Shown: one piece after another, positions 25,626-63,888 of the stretch | Numbering within the stretch: position 1 is the stretch's first letter | Layout of the letters: each line of letters begins with the position of its first letter | Virus record (IMG/VR): IMGVR_UViG_3300023174_000036 | Location: 186,001-250,000 of that record | DNA length: 64,000 bases | Strand: one strand, 5' to 3' | The notes under the pieces: model-generated | The model's database searches: none | What the model was told of the DNA's origin: nothing | Seen by the model: the letters and a program-made list of their open reading frames with translations, nothing else | Translations under genes and position numbers: made by a program

Positions 25626-25654
25626 ATTATACTGCCAAACTGCGGTGTTGTCAA
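25626..25654 (-). promoter_or_regulatory. Consensus sigma70 promoter
   Basis: TTGACA-N17-TATAAT. Confidence 0.85.
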
Positions 25655-26460
25655 CCAGACAATTTTCTTATTGTACTGTCATTTTTGGGCAAAATTCCCA
25701 AATTAACATAATCTAAATATTGATTTAAATTGATTTTTTTATTTAATATTTTTGAATGAAAATATTCATGTTTAAAATTATTTACATCCAACTCTTGAAT
25801 AGACTGTGTTATCAAATCAACTAGTATCTTTATATTAGGTTCGGATAAATGGTTTGAACGTGGGTCAAATCCAATCATATTACCACGATACTCGTCGTTG
25901 GAATAAAAATCATAAATTTCATTTCTAGAAATATGCCCTAGATACACATCGGGCATTAAAAAATTTTTTGGCATCGCATACGGTAATTTTTCACGGAACG
26001 GTAAATTCTTCAATAAAATAAATTTTACGCTTGGTTTAGCGTATGCATAGTTAATTAGAGAATGTATATAGCTTTGTTGATTTATGTCTATCAGTCTATA
26101 GTCTTGGTTTACCAAGTACCATTCAATAAATGATTTATTATCACAATACCAAGTGTCTCTATAATTGTCTGGCACATCATGCACATAATTACTAGCCTTG
26201 TTAGGCACATTGTCGGTTACATATCTAAGATTTACTCTGCCAGCAGTAGTCATTACAAAACAAATTATATCATCATCAGCAATAACATTATTACTAATGT
26301 CTCTGCAAATATTAAGCATAGAAAATTCCGTACTACTGCCACCTACTGCTTGGTTGATTAATGGGATACCAAGGCTTTTGGATAGCAGTTTAGGCCAACT
26401 ATCTTGACTATAGTCATACTCGGCCGCATAACTACATCCGTAAATTCTTAGGGTACTCAT
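25651..26460 (-). CDS. SGNH/GDSL-like hydrolase or acyltransferase
   Basis: YGCSY...W..LL...N.AVGGSS and C-terminal NH. Confidence 0.55.
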   Translation of the reverse strand: MSTLRIYGCSYAAEYDYSQDSWPKLLSKSLGIPLINQAVGGSSTEFSMLNICRDISNNVIADDDIICFVMTTAGRVNLRYVTDNVPNKASNYVHDVPDNYRDTWYCDNKSFIEWYLVNQDYRLIDINQQSYIHSLINYAYAKPSVKFILLKNLPFREKLPYAMPKNFLMPDVYLGHISRNEIYDFYSNDEYRGNMIGFDPRSNHLSEPNIKILVDLITQSIQELDVNNFKHEYFHSKILNKKINLNQYLDYVNLGILPKNDSTIRKLSG

Positions 26461-27128
26461 GGTAAACTCAATTCCACTAAACCAGTTGGGTTAATTAAAA
26501 TCAAATCAGCTAATCTATTTCCAAATTTTTGATTTTGGTCGTCTGTAAAATGGTTACGATTTGATTGATCTTCTGGGTAACCTGCCCATGCCCATAATCT
26601 TTCTTTGATAGTCATGCCATTTTGAAACACATAGTTTACAGTACTGTCAAAACACAGCAGATGTACCACATAAGGAATATTATAAGATGCGATGAGCGCA
26701 TCCAGTTCTAGATGCCAAGCCTGTTGTGCCCACCTACAATACTCTCCACACCATAGTTGTTCATAATAAGATACTGCCGCCTTAACAATTTTCTGTTGTG
26801 TAGATCTATCCATATCCAGATGTTCACCGTGCAACGCTATTTTTCCATGGCCAAGTATACCGCTATTGATACCACAATCCATGTCGTTGGGTATTCTATT
26901 TGGTTCAGTATGACACATTATCAAAACTTTTGGTACGCAAATTTCCAGCTCTGACAACAAACGTTTTCTAGTGCTCCACCACGAGCCTCCGCCAAATCCG
27001 TATCCTCGTGGGATGTTATTATAACCAGTCAATCGCTGACTTATAATCATAGGCCAGTCGTTGTGAGTGTCTCTATCTCCGCAAAAACTATCGCCCACTA
27101 TCAGTATGTCTTTGTGTTCAAACATCAT
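26457..27128 (-). CDS. SGNH/GDSL-like hydrolase or acyltransferase
   Basis: IVGDSF...W...GGS.W and C-terminal NHF...N. Confidence 0.55.
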   Translation of the reverse strand: MMFEHKDILIVGDSFCGDRDTHNDWPMIISQRLTGYNNIPRGYGFGGGSWWSTRKRLLSELEICVPKVLIMCHTEPNRIPNDMDCGINSGILGHGKIALHGEHLDMDRSTQQKIVKAAVSYYEQLWCGEYCRWAQQAWHLELDALIASYNIPYVVHLLCFDSTVNYVFQNGMTIKERLWAWAGYPEDQSNRNHFTDDQNQKFGNRLADLILINPTGLVELSLP

Positions 27129-27877
27129 TATTTTCTTTCTATATCCAATTCAGTGCAATTATCTCCGTATTGTATCTCTACCACATGCAAAATGTTGCTG
27201 CCAATGTTTTCAAGCTGATGCCATTCGCTTTTATGTATTTCAATAGTGCCATACTGTTTAATATCAGTATAGCCCAAATGCCAGTGTACTCGGGCTGAGC
27301 CCTGTGCCACAAACCAAAATTCCGTTCGATACGCATGACGTTGCATACTTAATTTCTCACCGGGATTAACTATTAGTTCTTTGGTTTTTACAGCGTTATT
27401 TATTTGAGATAACACACGCCATTCTCCCCATGTTCGGCCAACACGTTCGCCACTCCAGTTGCTCAAGATCCAACTACTTGAATTCTTTTTGTCTTCTCCG
27501 CCTACTCCAAACACAAATTGTAAATTTAAATATTCTTCGAGTAAATCCATTTCTGGAACATTATGTTGAGTCCTATCTCCGCCGTTGGCAAAAATAATAT
27601 CATGATTGGGAAAAATTGATCTGGCCTTACGTACAGCATCTTTGGCAGAGCCGTCGTTGTCATTAAAAGTAATAACTCTATCAACCACAGATAATGCCGC
27701 AATAATTGTGGCACGTTCTCCCCAAGGCATAAATGCCGCACCTTTCTTACGTGATAACCAAGCATCACTGTTAAGTCCAACAACTAATTTATCACCAAGC
27801 TGTCTGGCAGCATTAAAATACTCAATGTGTCCACTGTGTAATGGGTCAAATCCGCCTGTGACTAATACTATTTTCAT
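27128..27877 (-). CDS. Nucleotidyl(cytidylyl/adenylyl)transferase fused to a cupin (mannose-6-P isomerase-like)
   Basis: TGGFDPLHSGH (HxGH), GLNSD, GGDR, KNSSS; C-terminal R.WG...LSMQRH..R.EFW...H.L.N...EIQYG. Confidence 0.85.
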   Translation of the reverse strand: MKIVLVTGGFDPLHSGHIEYFNAARQLGDKLVVGLNSDAWLSRKKGAAFMPWGERATIIAALSVVDRVITFNDNDGSAKDAVRKARSIFPNHDIIFANGGDRTQHNVPEMDLLEEYLNLQFVFGVGGEDKKNSSSWILSNWSGERVGRTWGEWRVLSQINNAVKTKELIVNPGEKLSMQRHAYRTEFWFVAQGSARVHWHLGYTDIKQYGTIEIHKSEWHQLENIGSNILHVVEIQYGDNCTELDIERK

Positions 27878-28701
27878 ACAAGATCCTTGGCAATACAAAC
27901 ACGATTCAACATGTTGCCTCTGTTAAATTCTGAATATTCCGCACTGAGACCAAATAAAATGCAATCAGTTGGCTGTAAATTTAATTCTTTGCAAACTAGA
28001 TCATACTGGTTAGCATAGGTATCCCAGTTGTGATCTATTGTGTATTTTTTCATAAGGAATACTGCTGTGGCCATGTTCTTATGCGGCACCATGCCCACAC
28101 TGTTGAACGCATCTATGCCATCGTCTAAATTTTCTCTTTGGAATCTAATCCCACATCTCAAATATTGTGCGCCATCAAACACTTTGCTTATGCTGGTGCA
28201 AACGGAGTCTATGCATTTGTAGTTTAAATTAACATTGATATTTTTAGATATGCCTAGATAAGCAAAATCCAGCAGTACTGGCACATTTAATAATTCGCAT
28301 TGCTCCAGTATACTGTCCAATTCCGTATGTTTAGATCCAGAGTCGCTGAATGGCACACTGATAATAACAGCATCGTTTGATTCCACAACACTGTCATTCA
28401 GCCAAGACCATGACAATCCAGCTTTTACAGAAGCCTTGTGGTACATGAACTCGCCTTGGAAAAATCTAAATCGTCTGGCAAAATGTTTTAAATAAAAGTG
28501 ATCAAAACCCTGTACAGTGCCGTGAATAAATGATCTAGAACCATAGTTTTCTAAACCCAAAAGATGATTATGTTTGCTGTTGACAATCCATTGAGTGTAT
28601 GTTTCTAGATATTCCGATAGATTGACCTCGGGCGGATTATGATATTTTATTTCTTCAGCAATTGCACTGTTGGGAATAGGTGTTGCACCTGCACATGGCA
28701 T
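27874..28701 (-). CDS. PLP-dependent aminotransferase-like protein
   Basis: VLLDFAY and SISK.F.....R.G fold-type-I PLP motifs. Confidence 0.6.
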   Translation of the reverse strand: MPCAGATPIPNSAIAEEIKYHNPPEVNLSEYLETYTQWIVNSKHNHLLGLENYGSRSFIHGTVQGFDHFYLKHFARRFRFFQGEFMYHKASVKAGLSWSWLNDSVVESNDAVIISVPFSDSGSKHTELDSILEQCELLNVPVLLDFAYLGISKNINVNLNYKCIDSVCTSISKVFDGAQYLRCGIRFQRENLDDGIDAFNSVGMVPHKNMATAVFLMKKYTIDHNWDTYANQYDLVCKELNLQPTDCILFGLSAEYSEFNRGNMLNRVCIAKDLV

Positions 28702-28704: not shown

Positions 28705-29247
28705 TTAACCTTTATAAAATCCTGAAATTTGTAAAGTATATTTGTCTTGCATACCTGCATTTGAACTGAGATGTAACACATTGCTGTCCCACATAAAGCC
28801 CGATCCTTTCTGCCAGTCAACACTAGTTTTGTAAGAGTCTTCAGTTTGATACTGAATAAACTGTCCCAGTTTCCAATCTTCTAAATAAATGTTAGCCCTG
28901 ACTTTTAAATCTGTTCGATTGGGATATTGTTTTGAAATTTGAAAGAATGTATCTCTATGCAAAGGCACTACACAACCCGGAGGTTGCAATATGGTGCTCA
29001 CAGTAATGACTTCCATGTTTAGTTGTTGGCCTAATTCCACATAGTCAACTTGATCAGCAGTCCACCAAAGTTGATGTATAATGGTATTTTCAAAACAATA
29101 GCTCTTGGGAAATCCGCCATATGTTTCATGCACATCTGTTAATTCATGTACTTGATGTTTGATGCAACTGCCTTCGTGAACAGAATAATCTGCACTTAGA
29201 AACATTTCAAAATCATAATCTAGTTGTATTTCTTTTAACATATTCAA
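28705..29247 (-). CDS. 2OG-Fe(II) oxygenase/cupin
   Basis: PG..VPLHRD...H.S.N.G..KYTLQ. Confidence 0.7.
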   Translation of the reverse strand: MNMLKEIQLDYDFEMFLSADYSVHEGSCIKHQVHELTDVHETYGGFPKSYCFENTIIHQLWWTADQVDYVELGQQLNMEVITVSTILQPPGCVVPLHRDTFFQISKQYPNRTDLKVRANIYLEDWKLGQFIQYQTEDSYKTSVDWQKGSGFMWDSNVLHLSSNAGMQDKYTLQISGFYKG

Positions 29248-30299
29248 TTTTCTTTATATTTTATTTGAGTATTCTGATCTTTGAGTAGATTTATGTTACT
29301 GCCACACATTATTGCACATCTTTCTAATCTGTCGTTTTCCCAAGATTTTCGTATACGATCAAACCATTGTCCGTTTACAATGTCTTTTAAATTCTTTTTA
29401 AAAACATTAGTATCCACCCCATCCATCATTTTTAGAATTTTCACATGATCGGAGTTGGATTCTGCTTCTATACCATATATGCGATCGTGTAAGAATCCGC
29501 AAGGAAATACATTGCCATCGGCTCCTATATATAATTTATAATTTTTCATCCAATAGCACTCTATTTTTGTATTTTTAACATACTCTGATAAATCAGTGTG
29601 TTTAATTGCACTATATGAAGTATTTAAGTATTCATTATCTGGAGGCAGTAATTCGTATTCTTTATTGCCTTTATGATCTAAAACATCAATTTTATTTACC
29701 AATTGATGATTCTTGTTGAAAAATCTTCCTGTTTTTTTAACATTAAATTCTGCAAAACCCAACGATAAACTCAATTCTCTAGCTTGATCAACTTGATGCT
29801 GATTGTGACGAAACACTATAAAATCCCAAACAGCTTTGCCACCCGACTTGATAAATGTGTCTGCATTGCCAATAATGCTGTCCCAATTGGTATTTTTTCT
29901 ATAAAGGTGATTGGTATCCGACAGTCCATCTATCCCAAACGCAATAAAATCAACTAGTTTGGCCAATTGTTCATATGTTTGTGTTCGACCCACTCCACCA
30001 TTGGTATGTATGCCAATTTTAAGAGCTGGATTAACCTGCATCAACCATTCGCACATTTTTGGCAAATCTGCGTTCATCAATGGATCACCATATGTTCCGC
30101 AAAAGTATATTAATTCAAGCTGTTTAACAAAATCAATATCTAACACAGTCTTAAACTGTGCCAAATTCCAATTGATTAACGGTAAGTTTTCTATAGTCTT
30201 GCCGCCATAGTTGTTTCTTGGACATTGCGGACATGCGGCATTGCAATGAGTGCTGATTTCGATCTCAATATTTCGAATTGTATCAAATGAATAATTCAT
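29244..30299 (-). CDS. Radical SAM/SPASM-twitch enzyme (subtype C)
   Basis: CNAACPQC; C-terminal C...PC...CAIMC. Confidence 0.9.
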   Translation of the reverse strand: MNYSFDTIRNIEIEISTHCNAACPQCPRNNYGGKTIENLPLINWNLAQFKTVLDIDFVKQLELIYFCGTYGDPLMNADLPKMCEWLMQVNPALKIGIHTNGGVGRTQTYEQLAKLVDFIAFGIDGLSDTNHLYRKNTNWDSIIGNADTFIKSGGKAVWDFIVFRHNQHQVDQARELSLSLGFAEFNVKKTGRFFNKNHQLVNKIDVLDHKGNKEYELLPPDNEYLNTSYSAIKHTDLSEYVKNTKIECYWMKNYKLYIGADGNVFPCGFLHDRIYGIEAESNSDHVKILKMMDGVDTNVFKKNLKDIVNGQWFDRIRKSWENDRLERCAIMCGSNINLLKDQNTQIKYKEN

Positions 30300-30301: not shown

Positions 30302-31567
30302 TTAACTTGCAAGTCCTTCAACGTATGCTCTGAATTCGTCAGCACGTTTATATACGTTCAATCGATTGTGTTCCACTATCTCAGAACATTGTGAAATAAT
30401 TCCGTCTAAATCTTGTGAACATAGGCCTTTTACAATTTGTGTAACTCTTTCGACTCGTTGAGCATAATCTTCAATGTTGTCATAATCTTCTGGCCAAACA
30501 CTATCAAAAGTTTTGTAGCCAGCAGTTCGTAAATAATTCAAAGACTGCGGAGTAGACATCAGTATAAATGGATGTTTATATAATACAGCTCTCATCAATT
30601 TTTCTGTGTAAAAGCTATAAGGTTTAGGGCTTTCAAACCTGCTTTCAAACACCACGCTAAAATAACTGCGATGAAAATAATCTAGCAATTGTTCACGACT
30701 GCCGAATCCCAACCACGAAGTCATGCCACCGCGCTCTCGATCCGTGACTGATCTTTGATCTAAAATACTTGGTAAAACATCAGCACTGTCCTGAATATTT
30801 AAATCATTTCTAATGTACTCGTGTAATGATTTTCCAGCGCCAGTACATTTTTCTGGCATGGAGACAAACCCTTGCTCATTTAAATTTTCTCTTGCAAAAG
30901 ACACATGCGATAAAACACGACCTTTGGTGTATCGACGAACCAATTTGACAAATTTTTTGTTTCGAACAACACTGGGTTCTGGTGCTACATAAGGAGGCAA
31001 TTGATCCACACTCCACATTTCCGCATAAGGAATATGTACCAGCTGATTCCGATAAGCAGGATTGATGCGTTCTACATCAGTGGATTTAAATATAGAAGTG
31101 GTCCACACATACATGCCATCACACGAACCAAATTCTTTATAAAAGCCGTCTAATATTCTGTTAGCAATATCCAACTCGCAATCGTCCCAGATGTGACTTA
31201 TGACAATTTTACACTTTTTGTTTTTCCATAATGTAATAATATTATCGGGCAAGTATTCTATCCAAGAACCTCGACCATTGGCAAATAAAAAATGTCCTTG
31301 ATACCGCATGTTGTGATGAACATTAATCATATATATGATTGGCCCTTGCGAAGCATATATCTCTGTATTTTTTAAGATATCAGAGTGATGAACATACATG
31401 TCACCAAAACCAAGAAATCTATGAAAACTTGGCAATGCAAAATATGACATACCGTGATTGATAGGGGTTTGATAAAAGTGTGAAAAAAATTCTTCAGTTT
31501 TCATTCCTATAGAGTTAGGAATAGGCCCATGTGGGCCAAAACTGTCAATGGCATATACTATTTTCAT
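30302..31567 (-). CDS. Glycosyltransferase-like protein (GT10-like C-terminus)
   Basis: YFSVVFES...YTEK...HPFIL...GYKTF...YD. Confidence 0.5.
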   Translation of the reverse strand: MKIVYAIDSFGPHGPIPNSIGMKTEEFFSHFYQTPINHGMSYFALPSFHRFLGFGDMYVHHSDILKNTEIYASQGPIIYMINVHHNMRYQGHFLFANGRGSWIEYLPDNIITLWKNKKCKIVISHIWDDCELDIANRILDGFYKEFGSCDGMYVWTTSIFKSTDVERINPAYRNQLVHIPYAEMWSVDQLPPYVAPEPSVVRNKKFVKLVRRYTKGRVLSHVSFARENLNEQGFVSMPEKCTGAGKSLHEYIRNDLNIQDSADVLPSILDQRSVTDRERGGMTSWLGFGSREQLLDYFHRSYFSVVFESRFESPKPYSFYTEKLMRAVLYKHPFILMSTPQSLNYLRTAGYKTFDSVWPEDYDNIEDYAQRVERVTQIVKGLCSQDLDGIISQCSEIVEHNRLNVYKRADEFRAYVEGLAS

Positions 31568-31568
31568 T

Positions 31569-34851: not shown

Positions 34852-34922
34852 TTTATTTTTTCTCTTATGTATAAATCGTTTGTATTTACGATAATACTTT
34901 TCTAAAACCGGCCGTATTGAAA

Positions 34923-56443: not shown

Positions 56444-56999
56444 CATATTCAACACCGTCAAGAATTGCCTTTACAAATTTTGCTGGCCGATGCATTGCAT
56501 AAACTTCCTGGTCAGTTATGGTCAACTTCCCAGTTGTGATGTTACCGATTGTTGTTAAGTTACCAGCAGAGTCAACTTTTAATTTGATTTCCATTCCGGA
56601 ACTATTCGTTAACGCTAATAAAAACTCTGTTAGTACTGGCCCAGTTCCAGAATAATCTCCAGCTACTTTAAAGTGCAATCCGCCAGCCAACGGCGTTTCT
56701 TCTTGACAGTAGCCTAAACTATTCCCCGGAGAAGTCCTTGCATAAACTTGTAGTCCGCCTATCATATCGTCAGCACCAACTGGTAGCTTATTACTTTGGT
56801 CGCCTCTTGATTTGGTTAACCCTACGTACACTGGAGCACCGCCCACACCAGCATAGTCCAAGTAGAATAGCTGTTCGTTTTTTGATGTCCGTATGATTAC
56901 ATGGCCACTCTTGGTACTGTCACCAAATATCTCTTGTTTATCAAAATCTGATGGATCGATGTTGTCTGGTATTACCTTGTCAGAAATATTATAATTCAT
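56412..56999 (-). CDS. Hypothetical protein with tail-fibre-like beta motif
   Basis: KSRG....P...DD.IG.L and K.DS.GNL motifs; TATAAATA upstream. Confidence 0.55.
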   Translation of the reverse strand: MNYNISDKVIPDNIDPSDFDKQEIFGDSTKSGHVIIRTSKNEQLFYLDYAGVGGAPVYVGLTKSRGDQSNKLPVGADDMIGGLQVYARTSPGNSLGYCQEETPLAGGLHFKVAGDYSGTGPVLTEFLLALTNSSGMEIKLKVDSAGNLTTIGNITTGKLTITDQEVYAMHRPAKFVKAILDGVEYAIALHPILEK

Positions 57000-57007: not shown

Positions 57008-57038
57008 CCTATAAATATGTTCACCGACTATTTATAGG
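57008..57038. promoter_or_regulatory. Face-to-face pair of T4-type late promoters
   Basis: ccTATAAATA-N11-TATTTATAgg, a 10-bp inverted repeat between divergent genes. Confidence 0.7.
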
Positions 57039-57044: not shown

Positions 57045-57797
57045 ATGAATCAAAAAGAGTTTTTTTGGTTGCACAGAGATTACCATAATCGAAGCCTTAA
57101 TGAAATGGCAAAATCTATTACAGAATACAACACAGCATTTCTATTGAGCAAAGGATATGAAGTATTTTATTGCACCAATGGGGCCGATCCTCAGTTAGAA
57201 CAAGCCGAAATTGGTTCCTTGTTTCCAACCACGGACTTGGATTACACTGTTAAAGATACACACATTGTAAATGATATTTTTAATTTTAATACCTACTTTA
57301 CAAAAAATACAGAAAATAGAATTCAAGTTTCGGGAGAGCATTATAAAACATTTGATTGTTTAGTGTCTCTAGCCGCAGGAGATAAAGTTGATAAAAATCC
57401 AATAGACATTGGATTGCTGGGAGATAATCATTATGTCGTTGATATCAGCCCAACTGCCATTCACAAGTCCATGGGAATTTACAAAGAAGTTTCATCTTAT
57501 AAACAACTTGATATTTTTAATGCAGTAGAACTTAAAAAATTCTTAGCAACATGTAAAGGAACCAAAGGTTTCTTTGTTGTGAGTAATTGTTTCTTATACA
57601 GTGTAAGTGCATTGATTTATGATGTGAAATTAAGATTACAAATGCAAAATCAATTTATTGAAATACTTGCAAACGATAAAATTGATTGGTATGTTGAAAT
57701 GGATTCAGCCGACGGCGAATTTTTCAATTGTGTAAGAGCCAAGGACATACAAAACAAAAAATTAGACAACAGATTCAAAGCCCTGCCATGGATATAA
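57045..57797 (+). CDS. Hypothetical protein (weak methyltransferase-like VVDISP motif)
   Basis: 250-aa ORF with SD. Confidence 0.6.
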   Translation: MNQKEFFWLHRDYHNRSLNEMAKSITEYNTAFLLSKGYEVFYCTNGADPQLEQAEIGSLFPTTDLDYTVKDTHIVNDIFNFNTYFTKNTENRIQVSGEHYKTFDCLVSLAAGDKVDKNPIDIGLLGDNHYVVDISPTAIHKSMGIYKEVSSYKQLDIFNAVELKKFLATCKGTKGFFVVSNCFLYSVSALIYDVKLRLQMQNQFIEILANDKIDWYVEMDSADGEFFNCVRAKDIQNKKLDNRFKALPWI

Positions 57798-58540
57798 ATC
57801 AATTTTTTGTCAATGAATCATCTCGTCCCTTTAATCAGGATGCGTTAATTGCTCCTAAGGAGTTTATTGGTTGGCAATCCGATGATAATATACTGACAAG
57901 TTATTTTAATTGGATACGAGAAAATAGCAGGTGTGCTTGCTTACGTCTGGATATTAATGCATCAATAGATGAAGTTGTAGAAGAATTGGAACACAAAGCA
58001 AGTAAACTTGCAGTTCCACACAGAGCAGGGGACAGTGTTGGTTGGAGAACTATAACACTGCACGGTTACTCTTCTTTGATGTCAGATTATTCTGGTTACT
58101 ACAAAGAAGAAGGCATAGTTTCCCAAGATGCTGTTGAAACGTGGACAGATTCTTGCAGTATTTTTCCTAAAACTGTGCAGTGGATTAAAGACAACATACC
58201 CTTTACAAGTTACAGTAGAATTCGCATAATGGTGTTAGATGCTGGCGGATATATTAATCCGCACAGAGACTGGCAAGGACAGATGCTGGGCGGTGGCATT
58301 AATATTGCCATGACCAATCCAGAAGGAGTTGAATTTGGACTAGAGAATGGCGGACTAGTACCATGGATGCCGGGAGATGTTAGAATCATAGATGTTGCAA
58401 GACATCATGGTGTTAGAAATCTTAGCAGTACTCCGCGAATTCATATTATTGCATCTCCTTTAGGAAAAACTTGGAACAAAGAAGCAATGGTATTAGCATG
58501 TAAAAGTTATTCAATGACACACGGGATGATGTATGACTAA
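57788..58540 (+). CDS. Aspartyl/asparaginyl beta-hydroxylase-like 2OG-Fe(II) oxygenase
   Basis: W.TITLHG...RIRIM.L..GGYINPHRD...H.V.N....RIH. Confidence 0.8.
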   Translation: MDINQFFVNESSRPFNQDALIAPKEFIGWQSDDNILTSYFNWIRENSRCACLRLDINASIDEVVEELEHKASKLAVPHRAGDSVGWRTITLHGYSSLMSDYSGYYKEEGIVSQDAVETWTDSCSIFPKTVQWIKDNIPFTSYSRIRIMVLDAGGYINPHRDWQGQMLGGGINIAMTNPEGVEFGLENGGLVPWMPGDVRIIDVARHHGVRNLSSTPRIHIIASPLGKTWNKEAMVLACKSYSMTHGMMYD

Positions 58541-59189
58541 CGAAGAATTTGAAAGGGCAATGTTATGGAACAGCTTAACAAATTTAGGAAGCTATGCTAA
58601 ACTGGATCTGAGAATAACTGAAACTGTTGTCACAAAAGATTTATTAAAGTTTTCTGAAAACTGGTGTCCTTACAATGAAAAAAAAGATGTACACAATAAT
58701 CGCTGGGGACTCCCAGTAACTAGTCATACTGGCGACGTCATGGATAATTACCATCTTAATAGTTTTGGTTATATGCAAAAATATCATGACGTAGAAATGA
58801 AGGAAGAAAACTTTACAACTCCTACGGATGTATATCATGCAATACCAGAAATTAAAAAACTAGTTGATGTGTTTGCTCCAGATATTGGCAGAGTTCATAT
58901 ACTAAAAGTAAATCAAGGCGGCTACTTTCCTCCCCACAGAGATTTTGCAGGAGTTGCGCCGGAGTATTTTCGACTGTCATGTGTTTTTGGAAGCTGTTCA
59001 GATTTTAATTACGTGCAAACATTACACGATCAAATTTTCAGGCCAGAACGCAGTCATTTATATTTTGTTAATTTTCAATTAAACCACAGCGTTTTTAGTT
59101 TTTCAGATAACTTATATAATCTAATCTTAACAGTTAAATTGAATCGTAGAACACATGATTTGGTTATCAAACATTCCATGTCAAAATGA
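58533..59189 (+). CDS. AspH-like 2OG-Fe(II) oxygenase
   Basis: GR.H.L....GGYFPPHRD...H.VF. Confidence 0.7.
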   Translation: MTNEEFERAMLWNSLTNLGSYAKLDLRITETVVTKDLLKFSENWCPYNEKKDVHNNRWGLPVTSHTGDVMDNYHLNSFGYMQKYHDVEMKEENFTTPTDVYHAIPEIKKLVDVFAPDIGRVHILKVNQGGYFPPHRDFAGVAPEYFRLSCVFGSCSDFNYVQTLHDQIFRPERSHLYFVNFQLNHSVFSFSDNLYNLILTVKLNRRTHDLVIKHSMSK

Positions 59190-60100
59190 AACTAGCTTAC
59201 GCCGATACTGCTAAAGAAAATTGGTTCCTAGTTGCATGGACGTTGTCAAACAAATGCAACTATCGCTGTAGCTATTGTCCTTCATATCTCAATGATGGTA
59301 GCACTGGACAACCTGATTGGCCGGTGGTTGAACAATTTGTAAACGGATTTGATATTCCTGGCAAAACAATTTGCTACAGGATAAGCGGCGGCGAACCCAC
59401 TTATTGGAAACATTTTTTAGACTTGGCTAAACTAGTTAAATCAAAAGGTCATCAGTTTACTTTCTTAACTAACGGTAGCCAAACAGTTGAGTATTATAAA
59501 GAAATTAGTAAATTTTCTGACGGTATCATGATTAGCTACCACGACGAGTATGCTGATATCGATCATATCATCGATGTTGCTAATGCTGTTGAATGCGTAG
59601 TAGTTGTTAATTTAATGATGGTACAAGACAAATTTGATCACATGGTTGGAATAGGTCAACAGTTGTATAAAGGAACTGACAAGTTGGCCATATGGCCCAA
59701 AGTAGTTTTAGATAAAACCAGCGGCGAGTTCGTAACTAACAAAGTAAGCGATTATACCGACGAACAAAAAGCCATCATAAAATCTTGGCCTTATTTTAGA
59801 AAAATTGATGATTCGAAAATACATAGAGGAGCTTTGTTACTTGATAATGTTCCAGTAACAGGAAACGACATTATAGTAAAAGGTCTAAACAATTACAAGG
59901 GCTGGGACTGCTGGGCAGGCGTAGACATGCTGAGTATCGACATGTGGGGTGATGTGTATCGAGCTGAATGTAAACAAGGCGGCAAGCTGGGTAATTTAGC
60001 TAATTACAATTTGCCAACTGAAACTATAACTTGTCCTGCTAACAAATGCAGTTGTCTTAGCGATATCTATCTTCAAAAAGAATCCAAAGTTACTATATAG
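59186..60100 (+). CDS. Radical SAM enzyme (subtype B)
   Basis: W.LSNKCNYRCSYC, SGGEPT, C...CSC..D. Confidence 0.9.
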   Translation: MKLAYADTAKENWFLVAWTLSNKCNYRCSYCPSYLNDGSTGQPDWPVVEQFVNGFDIPGKTICYRISGGEPTYWKHFLDLAKLVKSKGHQFTFLTNGSQTVEYYKEISKFSDGIMISYHDEYADIDHIIDVANAVECVVVVNLMMVQDKFDHMVGIGQQLYKGTDKLAIWPKVVLDKTSGEFVTNKVSDYTDEQKAIIKSWPYFRKIDDSKIHRGALLLDNVPVTGNDIIVKGLNNYKGWDCWAGVDMLSIDMWGDVYRAECKQGGKLGNLANYNLPTETITCPANKCSCLSDIYLQKESKVTI

Positions 60101-61197
60101 CTTTCTTGGTCATTAAAGTTGTGTGCCATTGTCACAACACTGTTTTTATATATAATTGGCCTACCCAACAAATGATCAGCAAACATGTCCCTTGCTAATA
60201 TTTTGCCATGCTTGTTAATAGTTAGTATTGGACAACTGGGAGTTCCAGTGGGTAGGAACATGGCATTACCTCCATAAGCAACTCCTGATCTAAATCTATA
60301 TTTTCCGCCAAATGATAATCCTATATCAAATGTAGTATGCTTGCCGGTAACAATATTGTAAGTTAATCCCCATTGGCTATTGTTGGCATGCTCATCGCCG
60401 TAGGGCAAAGCTACAATTGTGTCGTCTACCAATACCCCAGCATTGTATTTCTTTGCAAAGTCAGGTATGTCTAATTCGTGAAGTTTGTAGGTGTTGGTAA
60501 TAGTATCAAACTCTATTAGTTCCGATACCCCGGACGTTTCGCCAAATGGTAGAATGTACAGTGTATTACCAGTTACAATTATATCCGAATACTTTCTTGT
60601 TACACTGGGATTTTTTACGTTGATTGGAAATGTTTTTATTTTGACGCCGTCAAAGCTGGTCATATTTATGTACCCAGCAGTATCTCCTCGAGGAGCACTC
60701 CAGTACCTACCATTCGCATGTACTGTGCCCATGTGTGTTTTAGTGTGTTCCTGCTTATCAAATTCTACAGTATGCACTGCATCGTCTTTGATGTATATTC
60801 CATAGCTGGTTTGTTCATATCCTAACGGAAAACTAAAAGCAGTGTTACCATCAGTTGCTGAACTGTAGAACTGACCTTTGCCTGGTTTATCAATATAATG
60901 GTATATTGGTTTAAAATCTTTTAATTGTACAACTACATTAAAATCATCCCATATGCCATAAGGTATGAACCATACACTGTCGCCCACGCTTGAAATGGCA
61001 TTGAATTTACTAGTGGCCGCAGGCAAGTCTAAATCTATAAACCAAGTCTTGTCTCCGTCTTTGCACATAACTTTGCTGTAGTTCTTGCATTGTTCTGTAG
61101 CAAAAGGCGGACTAACTAATATATTGTTATGATTGTGCAGTACCAAATGTTTAATTGGTTCTTCTTTGTAAAAATCCTCAAACGCTTTATACTTCAT
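60073..61197 (-). CDS. Kelch-like beta-propeller protein
   Basis: Repeated K(Y/F)......(Y/W)..P(Y/F)G blades. Confidence 0.65.
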   Translation of the reverse strand: MKYKAFEDFYKEEPIKHLVLHNHNNILVSPPFATEQCKNYSKVMCKDGDKTWFIDLDLPAATSKFNAISSVGDSVWFIPYGIWDDFNVVVQLKDFKPIYHYIDKPGKGQFYSSATDGNTAFSFPLGYEQTSYGIYIKDDAVHTVEFDKQEHTKTHMGTVHANGRYWSAPRGDTAGYINMTSFDGVKIKTFPINVKNPSVTRKYSDIIVTGNTLYILPFGETSGVSELIEFDTITNTYKLHELDIPDFAKKYNAGVLVDDTIVALPYGDEHANNSQWGLTYNIVTGKHTTFDIGLSFGGKYRFRSGVAYGGNAMFLPTGTPSCPILTINKHGKILARDMFADHLLGRPIIYKNSVVTMAHNFNDQESYIVTLDSF

Positions 61198-62458
61198 TTA
61201 AGTTGATCTCTTTAATCACAGTTTCGCTAATGGTGTCAAATACCAGTACAGTGTGAAATGTTTCGCTTTGTCCGTAAGGAAAAGCAAATATTTTATCATC
61301 GATGATTACAGACGAGTTGAACTTTTCAATGGTTGTGTTATCTTTAAAATATTCGCTAATGTCTATAGTGTAGAATGAATCATTTGTTGTATCAACAACT
61401 AGTATATCAGCAAGATCGCCTTGTTGCTTCCAATTTTCTTCTGGTTCGCATACACATCCGCCACGCGGTATCCAGTATATCTTTCCTTGAGTATTTTCCC
61501 ACCCGGTAAAGTATTTTTTGCTTTCATATCCTACGCCGTCTACTGGAACTTGTTTCCATGTATCGTTGTTAGAATCAATTATCAACATTTTATTCCAACT
61601 ATCTTCATGGCCTGCTGGAGGGAAGTATGCTTTACCATTTTTAGATACTGCATGACTAAAGTATTTTCTTGAAGTGTCTTGCATACCTGTTTTTTCATAA
61701 GACCAACTAGTGCCATCGAATTTTAACATTATATCAAAATTATCATTTTCACTGTAAGGAGGTGCATACAACTTGTTTCCCACCTGCGCCATGGTTGTGT
61801 ATTTTTTATTAGTTATAATAGGAAACGGTTGCACATCATATTCTTTCCATGCGTGGGACATATCAGTTAATTCGTAATTAAACGTCTCGCAATCTAATTT
61901 TATTATGTAAGGGAAATACGGTTCAATGTAACGTTCTCCACGAGGTACTCCGTATATGAAATTATTAATTAGTTTACTAGTATGCCATTTCTTTTGGTCG
62001 TTGATTGGACAAACAATATTTTTTAAAAGTAATTCTTTAGTATATACATCAAATGAAATAGCAAAATCAAATTCTTTGTGTTCGCCGTATGGTAATGCTA
62101 TTACTTTATTTTTATATCTATGTGAAGCAATATATTTCCCCGGAGAATCGAACGGTAACTTAATCTGAGTTATTTCATCATTATCTGTATTAACAATTAA
62201 AATACTACATTCGTTGTATGGAAGAAATACTATAAAATTGTCTACTATAGTTCCGTACTGCCATTTTTCAAAACTTTCATCTGCTTCTAAATATATTTTT
62301 GTAACATCGAAAGTTACAGGATCAACCTTTATCATATAATCAATACGTTCTTTCAATCCGTACGGAGGTACATAGATCATGTTGTTTTTTCCTACCGTAG
62401 GAAAACTAAATGCTTGCGGGGTCAAATTTTTCTCCAAATGCAGATTTAAGGTCGGCAT
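61187..62458 (-). CDS. Kelch-like beta-propeller protein (paralog)
   Basis: About 8 repeats of K(W/Y/F)......IY..P.G. Confidence 0.65.
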   Translation of the reverse strand: MPTLNLHLEKNLTPQAFSFPTVGKNNMIYVPPYGLKERIDYMIKVDPVTFDVTKIYLEADESFEKWQYGTIVDNFIVFLPYNECSILIVNTDNDEITQIKLPFDSPGKYIASHRYKNKVIALPYGEHKEFDFAISFDVYTKELLLKNIVCPINDQKKWHTSKLINNFIYGVPRGERYIEPYFPYIIKLDCETFNYELTDMSHAWKEYDVQPFPIITNKKYTTMAQVGNKLYAPPYSENDNFDIMLKFDGTSWSYEKTGMQDTSRKYFSHAVSKNGKAYFPPAGHEDSWNKMLIIDSNNDTWKQVPVDGVGYESKKYFTGWENTQGKIYWIPRGGCVCEPEENWKQQGDLADILVVDTTNDSFYTIDISEYFKDNTTIEKFNSSVIIDDKIFAFPYGQSETFHTVLVFDTISETVIKEINLNEV

Positions 62459-62861
62459 GTAGCTTTATTAATATTTCTTCGTTACTGTACAGTCCCACAT
62501 TATCCCAATCTATCATATATATTTTATCATCATCAATTATAATATTACTTAGTACCCAGTCATAGTGAGCATAAGGTGCAGTTTGTTTAATATTATCTAA
62601 ACAAAATTTATATATTTTTTTTATGAAATCAGGACTGTGAGGAAATTTGTTGGCAGTAACTCCTGATATTTTTTTAACCTCTACCCACATCGTATCATGT
62701 GACCATCCGTATTCCTTTATGTAGTCGGGCCATATTGTCTTCATAATGTTAACATGATTAATTAAAAGATCTATATCTTTATATTTCCAAACTTTTTTAT
62801 AAGAATTTGGAAGCTCATATACATCTCTCTGTTTTGCAGGAGTTGATTTAATTAAGACCAT
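62406..62861 (-). CDS. APH/protein-kinase-like phosphotransferase
   Basis: HYDWVLSNII...IDWD catalytic-loop and Mg-binding motifs. Confidence 0.7.
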   Translation of the reverse strand: MVLIKSTPAKQRDVYELPNSYKKVWKYKDIDLLINHVNIMKTIWPDYIKEYGWSHDTMWVEVKKISGVTANKFPHSPDFIKKIYKFCLDNIKQTAPYAHYDWVLSNIIIDDDKIYMIDWDNVGLYSNEEILIKLHADLKSAFGEKFDPASI

Positions 62862-63888
62862 ATGCTGTTGCTACTTCTGGCAAGTAGTCTCTAATATTAA
62901 TTTTCCGCCAACTATCTAATGCTGATATTTTAAATTTAAAATGTTCGATCATTTTTTCATCTGCAACACCCGCAGACCAGTTTCTTACCGAATTACTTTG
63001 ATACTGATCTTTAAGTCGTTGAGGAGCATTTTTGCAACTAAGCCATGCCGGACCATTTAAAATATTTTCATAGTAACCAAAATTATTTTTATCAGCATAT
63101 TCTTTTATATCATCAGTAAAGCTGGCATTGAGAACACTGATAGTAGGAGTTAAATCAACTTTGCAAAAATCTGCGTACCTATGAGCATTTTCATTTATGA
63201 CATCCCAGTTACTTCCGTATCTAATATAATCTATTCGTTTGTCGACTGCATCCAAACTTAATGCCATTAATACATTATTAAATTTCCTAAGAATTTTTTC
63301 AAGTTTTGGATTCCATATTGTACAATTTGTATTAAATCGTAGCGCAACACTGCTATCTAATCTTTCTAAAAATTCTGGTAGATGCCGGACCATCATGGGT
63401 TCGCCACCCGTTAGATAAACTTCTTTCATTTCAGCAGTTTCAATTTTACGAAATGTTTCCTCAGAAGCCCAGTTAAAATTGGGAATTTCTAAAATTCCAT
63501 ATATAGGCGCAGTTCCAGATTGTTGCATATCAATTGCTTCTTCAGCAATACTACTGCTACTCATTTCCCAACAGCTAATACATTTTAAATTACAACTATT
63601 TCCAAATCTCAAATCAAAATGACTCAGCCCGGGCCCATAAGGACGAGTCTTTTGACGTTGACTTTGTATTCCTTTTTCTTCTAAATTTTTACAAGGATGG
63701 CATGCTTCTGGCCAGATTTCGAGATCTAACTGTTTTCTGATATCTGTATGGAAATCACTGTCATGCCACTCTTGGGGAGTATGGGTATGTACAGTTTCTT
63801 TGTTAGTTGATTCTACGCTAACACAGCATAGCCGATATTGTCCGTCGGATCTTATACACGTTTGATGTTCTAAATATTTACATTTCAT
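62848..63888 (-). CDS. Radical SAM enzyme (subtype A)
   Basis: C...CC...CHPC; CNLKCISC; TGGEP. Confidence 0.9.
   Translation of the reverse strand: MKCKYLEHQTCIRSDGQYRLCCVSVESTNKETVHTHTPQEWHDSDFHTDIRKQLDLEIWPEACHPCKNLEEKGIQSQRQKTRPYGPGLSHFDLRFGNSCNLKCISCWEMSSSSIAEEAIDMQQSGTAPIYGILEIPNFNWASEETFRKIETAEMKEVYLTGGEPMMVRHLPEFLERLDSSVALRFNTNCTIWNPKLEKILRKFNNVLMALSLDAVDKRIDYIRYGSNWDVINENAHRYADFCKVDLTPTISVLNASFTDDIKEYADKNNFGYYENILNGPAWLSCKNAPQRLKDQYQSNSVRNWSAGVADEKMIEHFKFKISALDSWRKINIRDYLPEVATAYGLN

What the first reader, a model, noticed from the sequence alone, without database searches (positions are those of the whole stretch)
25651..63888. Late-expressed modification system: 10 radical-SAM enzymes in recurring A/B/C subtypes across two islands
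Seen: ten CxxxCxxC enzymes sort into three subtypes. Subtype A has an N-terminal Cys/twitch domain (33610, 50395, 55133, 62848). Subtype B has W.L...CNY.C.YC (31569 C-half, 49433, 53178, 59186). Subtype C has LE....C.A.CP.C.R (29244, 54178). Each island holds an A+B+C set mixed with 2OG-Fe(II) hydroxylases, and between them they carry a PLP enzyme, a nucleotidyltransferase-cupin, SGNH proteins, a GT-like protein, a methyltransferase and a kinase. Four block heads are preceded by the T4-like late motif TAAATA (34883, 49421, 57010, ~63918) rather than by sigma70 promoters. Inference: a multi-step pathway acting late, most plausibly on virion proteins or their glycans (or on DNA after replication). 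Substrate and product are unknown to me.
Basis: partly seen in the sequence, partly recalled or inferred. Interest (0 to 1): 0.8.

Follow-up and report, generated by a model that had tools for sequence, protein, structure and literature searches.

The report
Jumbo-phage radical-SAM tailoring gene islands
A roughly 355-kb phage carries two gene islands with ten radical-SAM enzymes plus hydroxylases, a methyltransferase, a PLP enzyme and sugar-activating enzymes; the core set is shared with predatory bacteria, probably decorates a sugar-containing surface molecule, and its chemistry is unknown.

Summary
The core observation holds. A has an N-terminal twitch domain (NCBIfam NF033640). B has a viperin/MoaA-like core. 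C has a C-terminal SPASM/twitch domain. Each island holds an A+B+C set.

The 2OG oxygenases, the PLP enzyme, the nucleotidyltransferase-cupin, the methyltransferase fold and the small kinase are supported. The SGNH and GT-like calls are leads only.

Late expression is weakly supported. TAAATA is not over-represented overall, but it is enriched just upstream of gene starts.

New findings:
- The core cassette (49433 B, 51677 methyltransferase, 54178 C, 55133 A) is conserved in Bdellovibrionota chromosomes, next to GT2 glycosyltransferases and carbamoyltransferases.
- It also occurs in marine T4-like myophage host-recognition clusters.
- A confidently modelled domain with no solved-structure match (52231) is fused, in different proteins, to rSAM A, to rSAM B or to Asp/Arg hydroxylases.

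Best reading: a glycan or glycoconjugate tailoring system in hypervariable, fibre-adjacent islands (about 0.42). Protein modification is the main rival. Multi-rSAM phage modules were reported in 2010 and 2020 and remain uncharacterised.

The parts
34923..35762 (-). 279-aa Trp-rich protein of unknown function; first gene of the island 1 block
   Evidence: No Pfam or PHROG hit. Sequence shown.
33610..34932 (-). Radical SAM subtype A (N-terminal twitch). The likely true start is the ATG at 34857.
   Evidence: NF033640 at 350.9 bits against a cutoff of 170. SPASM and Radical_SAM Pfam hits. Start position judged from the family alignment.
31569..33617 (-). Fusion protein: an N-terminal DUF-X domain (homologous to 52231) joined to radical SAM subtype B
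   Evidence: BLASTP matches residues 142-241 to 52231 and residues 358-682 to the B paralogues. PF04055 covers residues 373-470. Fusion relatives P0121, P0122 and P0130 are 43-47% identical.
30302..31609 (-). 421-aa protein (ATG at 31567) of a mostly phage-borne family; glycosyltransferase-like as a lead only
   Evidence: 71 homologues, none with a Pfam domain. No PDB profile hit and no GT10 Pfam hit. Atlas GT10 lead at 0.81, and structural neighbours fused to epimerase or methyltransferase domains.
29244..30299 (-). Radical SAM subtype C with a C-terminal SPASM/twitch region
   Evidence: PF04055 and PF13186. 35% identical to 54178. Nearest solved relative by profile is BlsE.
28705..29247 (-). 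Probable small 2OG-Fe(II) oxygenase
   Evidence: PLHRD...H motif. Only weak Asp_Arg_Hydrox and PhyH hits at E about 0.17.
27874..28701 (-). Fold-type I PLP-dependent (aminotransferase-like) enzyme
   Evidence: Family alignment has invariant D144, S169, K172 and R181. PDB profile hit to aminotransferase 3if2 at E 7e-4, across the SFSLSK lysine motif. Fused to rSAM A in marine myophage contigs.
27128..27898 (-). Sugar-phosphate (RfaE domain II-like) nucleotidyltransferase fused to a PMI-type cupin
   Evidence: PF01467 and PF01050. TIGR02199 at 76 bits, below its cutoff of 181, plus the cupin part of GMP_PMI. phrog_7878.
26457..27128 (-). SGNH/GDSL-like protein (motif only)
   Evidence: N-terminal ILIVGDSF motif. 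No HMM hit.
25651..26460 (-). Unknown protein, possibly a degenerate SGNH-like protein; last gene of island 1
   Evidence: YGCSY motif in place of GDS. One Bdellovibrionia homologue, in L045.
49433..50404 (+). Radical SAM subtype B; orthologue of the bacterial cassette's B gene
   Evidence: PF04055. 48-53% identical to the Bdellovibrionales genes that sit next to 55133 orthologues.
50395..51687 (+). Radical SAM subtype A
   Evidence: NF033640 at 223 bits. 24.6% identical to a Ralstonia phage RsoM2USA gene.
51677..52291 (+). Class I SAM-dependent methyltransferase fold; conserved partner of the cassette
   Evidence: AlphaFold2 model at pLDDT 93.4. Foldseek matches to Fur6, PhzM, DnrK and RebM at E 1e-10 to 1e-8. 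Homologues in 27 of 78 bacterial loci and in RsoM2USA.
52231..53181 (+). DUF-X: a domain of about 300 aa with no match among solved structures; proposed shared adaptor or substrate-binding module
   Evidence: pLDDT 86, pTM 0.82. No PDB match at E<=0.001. Only uncharacterised phage proteins match in BFVD. 835 representative clusters. Fusions to rSAM A, rSAM B and Asp/Arg hydroxylase.
53178..54185 (+). Radical SAM subtype B
   Evidence: PF04055 at 54 bits. Best NCBIfam match is viperin_w_prok at 66 bits, below its cutoff of 180.
54178..55149 (+). Radical SAM subtype C (SPASM/twitch); orthologue of the bacterial cassette's C gene
   Evidence: PF04055 and PF13186. 37-41% identical to bacterial neighbours of 55133 orthologues.
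55133..56443 (+). Radical SAM subtype A; best member of NF033640 in the window
   Evidence: 410 bits against a cutoff of 170. 45-49% identical to Bdellovibrionota orthologues.
56412..56999 (-). 195-aa Gly-rich protein of unknown function with its own TATAAATA upstream
   Evidence: No family hit. TATAAATA at 57029-57036 on the minus strand.
57045..57797 (+). 250-aa unknown protein; methyltransferase-like as a lead only
   Evidence: Atlas neighbours DUF7790 and DUF3419 at 0.80-0.89. TATAAATA at 57010.
57728..58540 (+). Asp/Arg beta-hydroxylase family 2OG oxygenase
   Evidence: PF05118 at 39.9 bits against a gathering score of 22.6. Two or three further paralogues lie just past the window end.
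58533..59189 (+). 2OG-Fe(II) oxygenase, proline-hydroxylase-like
   Evidence: Alignment motif PPHRD...HSV. PDB profile hits 4p7w and 1e5r at E about 2e-4.
59186..60100 (+). Radical SAM subtype B
   Evidence: PF04055. BLASTP clustering.
60073..61197 (-). Beta-propeller-like protein, paralogue of 61187
   Evidence: BLASTP match to 61187 at E 7e-6. No HMM hit.
61187..62458 (-). Beta-propeller (Kelch-like) protein of a large phage family
   Evidence: Weak PF24681 hit. Atlas clusters are 100% viral, with propeller structural neighbours.
62406..62861 (-). Small APH/choline-kinase-like kinase
   Evidence: HYDWVLSN and IDWD motifs. Weak PF01633 hit. APH hit (weak) in the L103 homologue. GntI kinase at E 1e-3.
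62848..63888 (-). Radical SAM subtype A
   Evidence: NF033640 at 208 bits. GTAAATAC lies 30 nt upstream.
19565..19915 (-). IscA/HesB-type Fe-S assembly protein; possible support function for the Fe-S enzymes
   Evidence: PF01521 in the precomputed gene table.

Best explanation
The two islands encode one modular tailoring system. It builds and decorates an unusual sugar or glycoconjugate displayed at a surface, either on the phage's fibres or on the infected cell's envelope.

Proposed flow:
1. The APH-like kinase and the RfaE-like nucleotidyltransferase-cupin activate, and perhaps isomerise, a sugar phosphate.
2. The three rSAM types carry out oxygen-independent C-H chemistry on it. A would act like BtrN, oxidising a secondary alcohol to a ketone that the PLP enzyme then aminates. 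B, which resembles viperin and MoaA, would dehydrate or rearrange a nucleotide-linked ribose or sugar. C, which resembles BlsE, would decarboxylate or oxidise.
3. The class I methyltransferase methylates the product, and the Asp/Arg-type and proline-hydroxylase-type 2OG oxygenases hydroxylate it.
4. SGNH-like and GT-like proteins would (de)acylate and transfer it.
5. The DUF-X domain (52231, also the N-half of 31569) holds the common substrate or scaffold for the different oxidative enzymes.

Repeated A/B/C sets with 22-35% identity would give several different decorations. Swapping cassettes would diversify the product, as expected in a host-recognition region.

Shown: the enzyme families, the cassette conservation, the fusions, and the neighbourhood of glycosyltransferases and fibre genes.

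Inferred: every substrate, every reaction, the order of steps and the final target.
For: Families and subtypes.

The core cassette B(49433) + methyltransferase(51677) + C(54178/29244) + A(55133) recurs in Bdellovibrionota chromosomes. Of 78 loci, A is in 77, B in 46, C in 46, the methyltransferase in 27 and the PLP enzyme in 12.

The most recurrent other neighbours there are three GT2 families (11, 9 and 6 loci), a carbamoyltransferase (7 loci) and an SDR-like protein (8 loci). Epimerase/GDP-mannose dehydratase, SIS and GNAT genes also occur.

Sugar-nucleotide enzymes inside the phage islands:
- RfaE-like nucleotidyltransferase + PMI cupin in the window.
- UDP-Glc/GDP-Man dehydrogenase in a related jumbo phage.
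- Two GT-A genes, an amidinotransferase and a PAP2 gene beside five rSAM genes in Campylobacter phage CP220.

Fusions that tie the parts together:
- A to PLP, and A to A.
- DUF-X to B, to A, or to Asp/Arg hydroxylase.
- Hydroxylase to the 499-aa domain whose gene lies just past the window end.

Nearest solved relatives lean towards small-molecule sugar or nucleotide enzymes. The A twitch domain matches the BtrN twitch at E 3e-4. B matches viperin-like proteins and MoaA at E 7e-13 over most of the core. C matches BlsE at E 3e-5.

Position and variability:
- Island 1 follows gp9/10-like fibre or baseplate genes.
- Marine relatives sit beside DUF4815 and fibre genes.
- The pelagimyophage host recognition cluster is described as holding rSAM cassettes, glycosyltransferases and rfaE (PMC7029224).
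- Neighbouring genes differ sharply in divergence between close relatives, 95% against 41-51% identity, which suggests cassette replacement.

No precursor-peptide-like conserved small ORFs were found.
Against: - No substrate is identified, and no glycosyltransferase is demonstrated inside the window. The only candidate, 30302, failed Pfam and PDB profile tests.
- No polysaccharide export or polymerase genes turned up in the 8-kb bacterial flanks, so a classical O-antigen or capsule locus is not indicated.
- A 300-aa adaptor domain shared by three enzyme classes fits a macromolecular substrate, possibly a protein, better than free NDP-sugars.
- PF05118 enzymes classically hydroxylate proteins. 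Twitch/SPASM rSAMs are best known as peptide and protein maturases, and the core of A also matches SkfB and CteB.
- The PDB similarities are mostly to the generic rSAM core.
- GT2 neighbours are frequent but account for only a minority of loci.
Confidence: 0.42

Rival explanations
1. Direct post-translational modification of proteins, such as tail fibres or other virion or envelope proteins. The rSAM enzymes would install cross-links, epimerisations or C-methyl-type changes. The Asp/Arg and proline-type hydroxylases would hydroxylate side chains. DUF-X would act as a large substrate-recognition domain, analogous to a RiPP recognition element.
For: - Twitch and SPASM auxiliary-cluster domains are present.
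- The core of A matches SkfB and CteB.
- There are four to five PF05118 paralogues plus a proline-hydroxylase-like enzyme.
- DUF-X is fused to three enzyme classes, which is how a targeting domain behaves.
- A 2OG oxygenase sits among the fibre genes at 3675-4448.
- The islands lie next to giant fibre proteins.
- A small Gly-rich protein with its own TATAAATA sits inside island 2 at 56412-56999.
Against: - The islands are tightly packed and have no precursor-like ORFs, and the bacterial loci have no conserved small ORFs.
- No RRE domain was detected.
- B and C resemble nucleotide- or nucleoside-acting enzymes rather than peptide maturases.
- The PLP aminotransferase, nucleotidyltransferase-cupin, kinase, GT2 and carbamoyltransferase context is hard to explain for a pure protein modification.
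- The fibre proteins have few Cys residues.
Confidence: 0.27
2. Synthesis of a soluble small molecule during infection, rather than a surface decoration. Candidates are an aminocyclitol-, nucleoside- or pterin-like metabolite, a modified nucleotide or a cofactor.
For: - The BtrN-like twitch domain combined with a PLP aminotransferase.
- An APH/GntI-like kinase.
- An amidinotransferase beside rSAM genes in CP220, and a similar gene set in cyanophage S-SCSM2R (PMC12801897).
- B resembles viperin, MoaA and QueE.
- A QueD-like PTPS gene lies nearby at 22581-23057.
Against: - GT2 enzymes are the commonest bacterial neighbours.
- Placement next to fibre genes and hypervariability suggest a surface role.
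- A shared 300-aa adaptor is unusual for soluble-metabolite enzymes.
- No score reaches the cutoff of any known cofactor pathway family.
Confidence: 0.16
3. Post-replicative DNA base hypermodification. Published thymidine pathways combine kinases, PLP enzymes and rSAM isomerases, and 7-deazaguanine pathways are another known route.
For: - Thymidine hypermodification pathways use rSAM, PLP and kinase enzymes (PMC8989533, PMC5889632).
- A QueD-like PTPS gene is in the window.
- CP220, which has a comparable rSAM module, fully replaces dG by dADG (bioRxiv 10.1101/2023.04.13.536721).
Against: - The same cassette is chromosomal and phylogenetically coherent in Bdellovibrionota, next to rpsU, dnaG and rpoD and GT2 genes.
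- No DpdA, QueC, QueE-level match, hydroxymethylase or DNA-kinase family is found in the window.
- B scores against QueE are 23-34 bits, against cutoffs above 200.
Confidence: 0.06

Closest known systems
Radical-SAM cassettes in the 'host recognition cluster' of pelagimyophages and cyanomyophages (Zaragoza-Solas et al. 2020, PMC7029224)
   Same: - Hypervariable islands beside tail-fibre genes in T4-like phages. They contain rSAM cassettes, an Asp/Asn beta-hydroxylase, rfaE-type genes and sugar genes.
- Marine contigs with A and C orthologues at 36-44% identity sit beside DUF4815 and fibre-like genes.
- Cassette content differs between close relatives.
   Different: - The phage here is a roughly 355-kb jumbo phage with two islands, at least ten rSAM genes and B-type enzymes. 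I did not find B-type genes in the marine contigs I inspected.
- The paper only notes that the cassettes exist. It gives no subtypes, partners or function.
Multi-rSAM 'interchangeable module' of Campylobacter phages CP220 and CPt10 (Timms et al. 2010, PMC2853527)
   Same: - T4-like phages with 11-12 rSAM genes, including a five-gene module described as interchangeable. It lies next to baseplate genes and a QueD-like gene, together with an amidinotransferase, two GT-A genes and a PAP2 gene.
- The module has weak homology to the window's B and C types, 25-31% identity.
   Different: - Only distant sequence similarity.
- No N-terminal twitch (A) orthologue was found at E<=1e-5.
- The function of the CP220 module is also unknown.
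BtrN / BtrR-type step of 2-deoxystreptamine biosynthesis (a twitch rSAM dehydrogenase followed by a PLP aminotransferase); established biochemistry, cited from my own knowledge
   Same: - The N-terminal domain of subtype A matches the BtrN twitch domain (E 3e-4).
- Subtype A is fused to, or encoded next to, a fold-type I PLP enzyme.
   Different: - The twitch domain is N-terminal here and C-terminal in BtrN.
- Similarity is limited to the auxiliary-cluster domain.
- No activity has been tested.
- This is a model for how the enzymes might work, not a family assignment.
Viperin / prokaryotic viperins and MoaA (NTP-acting rSAM enzymes)
   Same: Subtype B aligns with viperin-like structures and MoaA over most of the rSAM core (E 7e-13 to 1e-8). 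These are also its best NCBIfam matches.
   Different: - Scores of 37-66 bits are far below the viperin cutoff of 180 and the MoaA cutoff of 284.
- B has its own C-terminal Cys-rich region, and in 31569 an N-terminal DUF-X fusion.
RiPP or protein maturase systems with SPASM/twitch rSAM enzymes (anSME, SkfB, CteB, PqqE)
   Same: Auxiliary Fe-S domains are present, the core of A matches SkfB and CteB, and several tailoring enzymes are clustered together.
   Different: - No precursor peptide and no RRE were found.
- C has only four C-terminal Cys residues instead of the seven of a full SPASM domain.
- The neighbourhood is dominated by sugar enzymes.

Membership tests
Radical SAM superfamily (PF04055) | A CxxxCxxC cluster motif and a Pfam score above the gathering threshold of 29.5 bits | tested here: met
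   All ten ORFs score 32-54 bits. Each has one CxxxCxxC. The GGEP SAM motif is conserved in A and B.
NF033640 N_Twi_rSAM (twitch domain-containing radical SAM protein) | Whole-protein score above the curated cutoff of 170 bits | tested here: met
   33610 scores 350.9, 50395 scores 223.4, 55133 scores 410.2 and 62848 scores 208.5 bits.
NF033640 N_Twi_rSAM (twitch domain-containing radical SAM protein) | An N-terminal Cys-rich twitch domain ahead of the rSAM core | tested here: met
   Four invariant N-terminal Cys residues (C9, C27, C85, C88 in 55133) across 12 sequences. This domain matches the BtrN twitch.
SPASM domain rSAM enzymes (PF13186), subtype C | A C-terminal seven-Cys motif binding two auxiliary clusters | tested here: inconclusive
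   PF13186 scores of 23.5 and 21.5 bits sit at the gathering score of 21.5. Only four to five C-terminal Cys residues are present, which looks more like a twitch domain.
Viperin / prokaryotic viperin (NF038283), subtype B | Score above the curated cutoff of 180 bits | tested here: not met
   37-66 bits, covering only the N-terminal part of the model.
MoaA, QueE, NrdG and other cofactor-pathway rSAM equivalogs | Score above each family's curated cutoff | tested here: not met
   All are far below cutoff. For example, MoaA scores at most 49 bits against 284, and QueE at most 34 against 206.
RiPP biosynthetic cluster | A precursor peptide gene next to the maturases | tested here: not met
   Genes in the islands overlap or abut. 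The only conserved small ORFs in 78 bacterial loci are a 49-aa membrane peptide beside the carbamoyltransferase, and ribosomal protein S21.
RiPP biosynthetic cluster | A RiPP recognition element (RRE) in the maturases | tested here: not met
   No RRE or PqqD family appears in the Pfam or NCBIfam results. A distant RRE could be missed.
Phage thymidine or 7-deazaguanine DNA hypermodification pathways | Hallmark genes: 5-hmdU DNA kinase and aGPT-Pplase, or FolE, QueC, QueE and DpdA | tested here: not met
   Only a QueD-like PTPS gene is present in the window. The other roughly 290 kb of the genome was not examined.
Host recognition cluster of T4-like marine myophages (PMC7029224) | A hypervariable island adjoining tail-fibre genes, with non-fibre genes such as GTs, rfaE, rSAM genes and hydroxylases | tested here: met
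   Fibre or baseplate genes at 482-19558 and 23133-24344 precede island 1. Identity to relatives is mosaic. Relatives show gene gain and loss.
Host recognition cluster of T4-like marine myophages (PMC7029224) | Position between VrlC and neck protein gp14 | not tested
   No VrlC/DUF4815 or gp14 was seen in the window. Island 2 is separated from the fibre genes by DNA ligase, ClpP and other genes.
T4-type late promoters | TATAAATA at -10 in front of late genes | tested here: inconclusive
   There are three full sites, all intergenic and 19-29 nt before starts. The island heads at 34883, 49421 and 63919 carry (C/T)GTAAATAC instead. TAAATA is positionally enriched.
T4-type late promoters | A phage-encoded late sigma factor (gp55/gp33 type) and late transcription timing | not testable with these tools
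   There are no expression data, and only 64 kb of the genome is in hand.
Glycosyltransferase family GT10 (candidate 30302) | A match to PF00852 or to a solved GT-B structure | tested here: not met
   None of 17 family members hit PF00852 at E<=1. There is no PDB profile hit. Only the Atlas 0.81 lead and an EK-containing motif remain.

The most novel reading that the evidence does not exclude
Phages and predatory Bdellovibrionota share a previously unrecognised class of surface-remodelling machinery. A structurally novel adaptor domain (DUF-X) would deliver at least three kinds of oxidative enzyme to one macromolecular substrate: two rSAM types and Asp/Arg-type 2OG hydroxylases. The result would be radical-installed modifications of a kind not yet described on glycans or fibre proteins, and swapping A/B/C cassettes would diversify host recognition or resistance to it.
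Probability: 0.2. Interest if true: 0.85.

Novelty: new variant of a known kind. Interest (0 to 1): 0.62.

Why it matters
Phage genomes with many rSAM genes have been noted since 2010 (CP220) and again in 2020 (pelagimyophages). No function, substrate or organising principle has been reported for them in the papers I found.

This locus gives the puzzle a testable structure:
- a defined A+B+C+methyltransferase core;
- recurrent PLP and hydroxylase partners;
- fusion proteins that link the parts;
- a widespread adaptor domain (835 representative clusters) with no Pfam family and no match among solved structures;
- cultivable entry points, namely Bdellovibrio sp. HCB2-146, Ralstonia phage RsoM2USA and Campylobacter phage CP220.

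NF033640 appears to have no characterised member, so working out the chemistry would probably yield new rSAM reactions. If the product sits on fibres or on the host envelope, it would bear on how large phages vary or protect their host-recognition surfaces.

Tried and rejected
- Near-identity DNA searches of both islands against isolated phages found nothing.
- Single-sequence Pfam, PHROG and PDB searches left 14 accessory ORFs without a hit. Profiles or models resolved four of them: 27874, 51677, 58533 and 52231.
- PDB profile searches for the 51677 and 30302 families found nothing.
- The GT10 idea for 30302 failed a family-wide Pfam scan.
- A 12-sequence alignment of subtype A was too diverse for the genome scan, so I reran it with five sequences.
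- Host inference failed. The Bdellovibrionota similarity suggested a host, but the tree puts the phage clade on its own long branch, not inside Bdellovibrionota.
- The MAG contigs with 8-11 rSAM genes from six phyla interleave with viral contigs, so they are probably mis-binned phage DNA and not evidence of wide cellular distribution.
- A search for RiPP precursors was negative.
- TAAATA and TATAAATA are not over-represented overall.
- Counts of sigma-70-like and terminator-like sites match shuffled sequence, apart from two perfect promoters.
- Tandem repeats: nothing relevant.
- Literature searches for the twitch-family name and for Bdellovibrio rSAM clusters found nothing specific.
- No toxin or effector genes were encountered.

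Full report
**Source and setting.** The window is part of a contig of about 354-356 kb that was recovered identically from IMG/VR and ENA assemblies. It is therefore a jumbo phage.
- Its left part encodes gp9/10-like baseplate or fibre proteins, including 1515-aa and 3290-aa giants.
- No isolated phage is close at the DNA level.
- Individual proteins find distant relatives in PA5oct-like and other large myophages.

**The observation.**
Each contains exactly one CxxxCxxC, and no other listed ORF in the window does.
- Subtype A (33610, 50395, 55133, 62848) belongs to NCBIfam NF033640, scoring 208-410 bits against a cutoff of 170. It has four invariant N-terminal cysteines, and that domain matches the twitch domain of BtrN.
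- Subtype B (49433, 53178, 59186 and the C-half of 31569) has the W.L...CNYxCxYC motif and a conserved C-terminal Cys-rich region. Its closest solved relatives are viperin-like enzymes and MoaA, but all curated family cutoffs are missed by a wide margin.
- Subtype C (29244, 54178) carries a marginal SPASM hit with only four to five C-terminal cysteines. It is nearest to BlsE, NifB and MoaA.
- Paralogues within a subtype are only 22-35% identical, so these are old lineages and not recent duplications.

**Accessory genes.** Supported:
- 27128 is an RfaE domain II-like nucleotidyltransferase fused to a PMI-type cupin.
- 57728 is an Asp/Arg beta-hydroxylase family enzyme.
- 58533 is a 2OG oxygenase related to proline hydroxylases.
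- 27874 is a fold-type I PLP enzyme with the Schiff-base lysine motif.
- 51677 has a class I methyltransferase fold (pLDDT 93).

Weak or unsupported:
- Weakly supported are the APH-like kinase 62406, a small 2OG-like protein 28705 and the SGNH-like motifs in 26457 and 25651.
- 60073 and 61187 are beta-propellers of a large phage family.
- A glycosyltransferase is not demonstrated. The candidate 30302 belongs to a family of 71 proteins, mostly from phage contigs, with no Pfam or PDB profile match. Only a weak Atlas lead points that way.

Island 2 continues beyond the window. It adds two or three more Asp/Arg hydroxylases and a 499-aa gene.

**Promoters.**
- TAAATA is under-represented overall, 58 copies against 81 expected. 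TATAAATA occurs three times against about 5.7 expected.
- Position tells a different story. All three TATAAATA sites are intergenic and lie 19-29 nt before starts.
- Nine of the 58 TAAATA copies lie in the 50 nt upstream of starts, which is 2.3% of the area. That is the highest share among the 15 hexamers of the same composition.
- The nine include sites before two structural genes (3110 and 23133) and before 33610, 49433, 56412, 57045 and 62848.
- The three island heads share (C/T)GTAAATAC rather than TATAAATA.
- The 34883 site is upstream only if the family-consistent ATG at 34857 is the true start. The 49421 site ends 6 nt from the ATG.
- One full TATAAATA, at 39585, heads a minus-strand block that runs into DNA ligase and MazG-like genes and possibly on into island 1.
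- Two perfect 12/12 sigma-70 promoters flank the islands but serve neighbouring genes.

Late expression is therefore plausible but unproven.

**Relatives and context.**
- Close relatives on other contigs keep the order of island 2 but show mosaic divergence. In L005, 53178 is 95% identical while 54178, 62406 and 62848 are 51%, 44% and 41% identical.
- More distant jumbo-phage relatives gain a B12-rSAM gene, extra rSAM genes and a UDP-Glc/GDP-Man dehydrogenase.
- A scan of one genome per prokaryotic species found the closest cellular 55133 homologues (45-49%) almost entirely in Bdellovibrionales and Bacteriovoracaceae. Some lie on megabase contigs and in an isolate.
- Beside them sit orthologues of 49433 (about 50%), 54178/29244 (about 38%) and 51677 (about 33%). 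Homologues of 27874, 58533 and 57728 are often present too.
- The most recurrent additional neighbours are three GT2 families, a carbamoyltransferase with its small membrane peptide, and an SDR-like protein.
- The loci abut housekeeping genes (rpsU, dnaG, rpoD), so they are chromosomal.
- In a tree of 55133 orthologues, the Bdellovibrionota form one coherent group. The window's phage clade is a separate long branch, so no host can be inferred.
- Marine viral contigs interleave with MAG contigs from six phyla, which are therefore probably mis-binned phage DNA.
- Those marine contigs are T4-like myophage regions beside DUF4815 and fibre-like genes.

**Fusions.**
- 31569 joins the 52231-like domain to a B enzyme.
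- Marine myophages encode an A-A tandem protein (1412 aa) and an A-PLP fusion (820 aa).
- The 52231 domain models confidently (pLDDT 86, pTM 0.82). It matches no solved structure and only uncharacterised phage proteins in BFVD.
- A profile search of 1.84 billion representatives found 835 clusters at E<=1e-3.
- Among the 150 best, the domain is fused to rSAM B, to rSAM A, or to an Asp/Arg hydroxylase followed by a conserved domain of about 500 aa.
- That 500-aa domain is the homologue of the 499-aa gene just beyond the window end.
- One domain attached to three different oxidative enzyme classes behaves like a shared substrate-binding or scaffold module.

**Interpretation.** The evidence establishes a modular, multi-enzyme tailoring system shared by phages and Bdellovibrionota. 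The substrate is not established.

I favour a sugar or glycoconjugate (0.42) for these reasons:
- the activating enzymes in the islands;
- GT2, carbamoyltransferase, dehydrogenase and GT-A neighbours;
- the sugar- or nucleotide-acting character of the nearest solved relatives;
- the A-PLP linkage, which mirrors the BtrN-aminotransferase logic;
- the absence of precursor peptides;
- the fibre-adjacent, hypervariable setting described for pelagimyophage host recognition clusters (PMC7029224).

Direct protein modification (0.27) remains a serious rival. The twitch/SPASM domains, the many PF05118 hydroxylases and the adaptor-like DUF-X all fit it. A soluble metabolite (0.16) and DNA hypermodification (0.06) are less likely. 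DNA hypermodification is weakened mainly by the vertically coherent chromosomal cassette in bacteria and by the lack of hallmark genes in the window.

**Novelty.** Many-rSAM phage genomes and interchangeable rSAM modules were reported for CP220 and CPt10 (PMC2853527). rSAM cassettes were also noted in pelagimyophage host recognition clusters. The phenomenon is therefore known but unexplained.

New here are the A/B/C anatomy, the conserved core cassette with its methyltransferase, the link to Bdellovibrionota, the network of fusions, and the DUF-X domain.

I rate the finding a new variant of a known kind, with interest 0.62.

Noticed in passing
window 19565-19915 (-) and 20212-20772 (-): An IscA/HesB-type Fe-S assembly gene and an Fe/Mn superoxide dismutase lie between the fibre genes and island 1. 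They could support and protect the many oxygen-sensitive Fe-S enzymes (Pfam table).
   Followed up: no
window 22581-23057 (-) and 21396-22505 (-): A QueD-like 6-pyruvoyl-tetrahydropterin synthase and a UvdE-type endonuclease. CP220 also has a QueD-like gene near its rSAM module. This may hint at 7-deazaguanine or pterin chemistry elsewhere in the genome.
   Followed up: partly
window 25626-25654 (-) and 49405-49433 (-): Two perfect 12/12 sigma-70 consensus promoters (TTGACA-17-TATAAT). Each is intergenic and directly in front of a gene that flanks an island (24399-25625 and 48928-49260). The first leaves almost no leader before the ATG.
   Followed up: partly
window 57008-57038: The divergent TATAAATA pair lies in a near-perfect palindrome, CCTATAAATA-11 nt-TATTTATAGG, between 56412-56999 (-) and 57045 (+). 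This suggests a shared bidirectional control element.
   Followed up: no
window 3675-4448 (-): A 2OG-Fe(II) oxygenase (phrog_61) is embedded among the baseplate and fibre genes, away from the two islands.
   Followed up: no
window 3110-3661, 5139-9686, 9686-19558 (-): Three fibre or baseplate proteins share a gp9/10-like N-terminus. The 1515-aa and 3290-aa giants are Thr/Ser/Gly/Ala-rich with few or no Cys residues.
   Followed up: partly
window 36196-36891 (-), 36903-37268 (-), 39624-40214 (-): A Bax inhibitor-1/YccA-like membrane protein (183 bits), a MazG-like PRA-PH protein and a ClpP protease lie between the two islands, together with DNA ligase.
   Followed up: no
loci L066-L073 (MAG contigs assigned to six phyla): These contigs carry 5-11 consecutive rSAM genes and interleave with IMG/VR viral contigs in the 55133 tree. 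L066 also has a fibre-like ORF. They are probably phage DNA binned into MAGs.
   Followed up: partly
L001 (Ralstonia phage RsoM2USA, record 215949-218748): An isolated jumbo phage carries an A-type rSAM gene with a 51677-like methyltransferase gene one gene downstream. All are annotated as hypothetical. This could be a cultivable model for the pair.
   Followed up: partly
L107 (bacterial contig, gene 8001-11069) and L029 10552-12978: Large bacterial proteins join an Asp/Arg hydroxylase to a conserved domain of about 500 aa, preceded in P0134 (L107) by DUF-X. The L107 gene sits beside a carbamoyltransferase without any rSAM gene, so the hydroxylase branch can occur on its own.
   Followed up: partly
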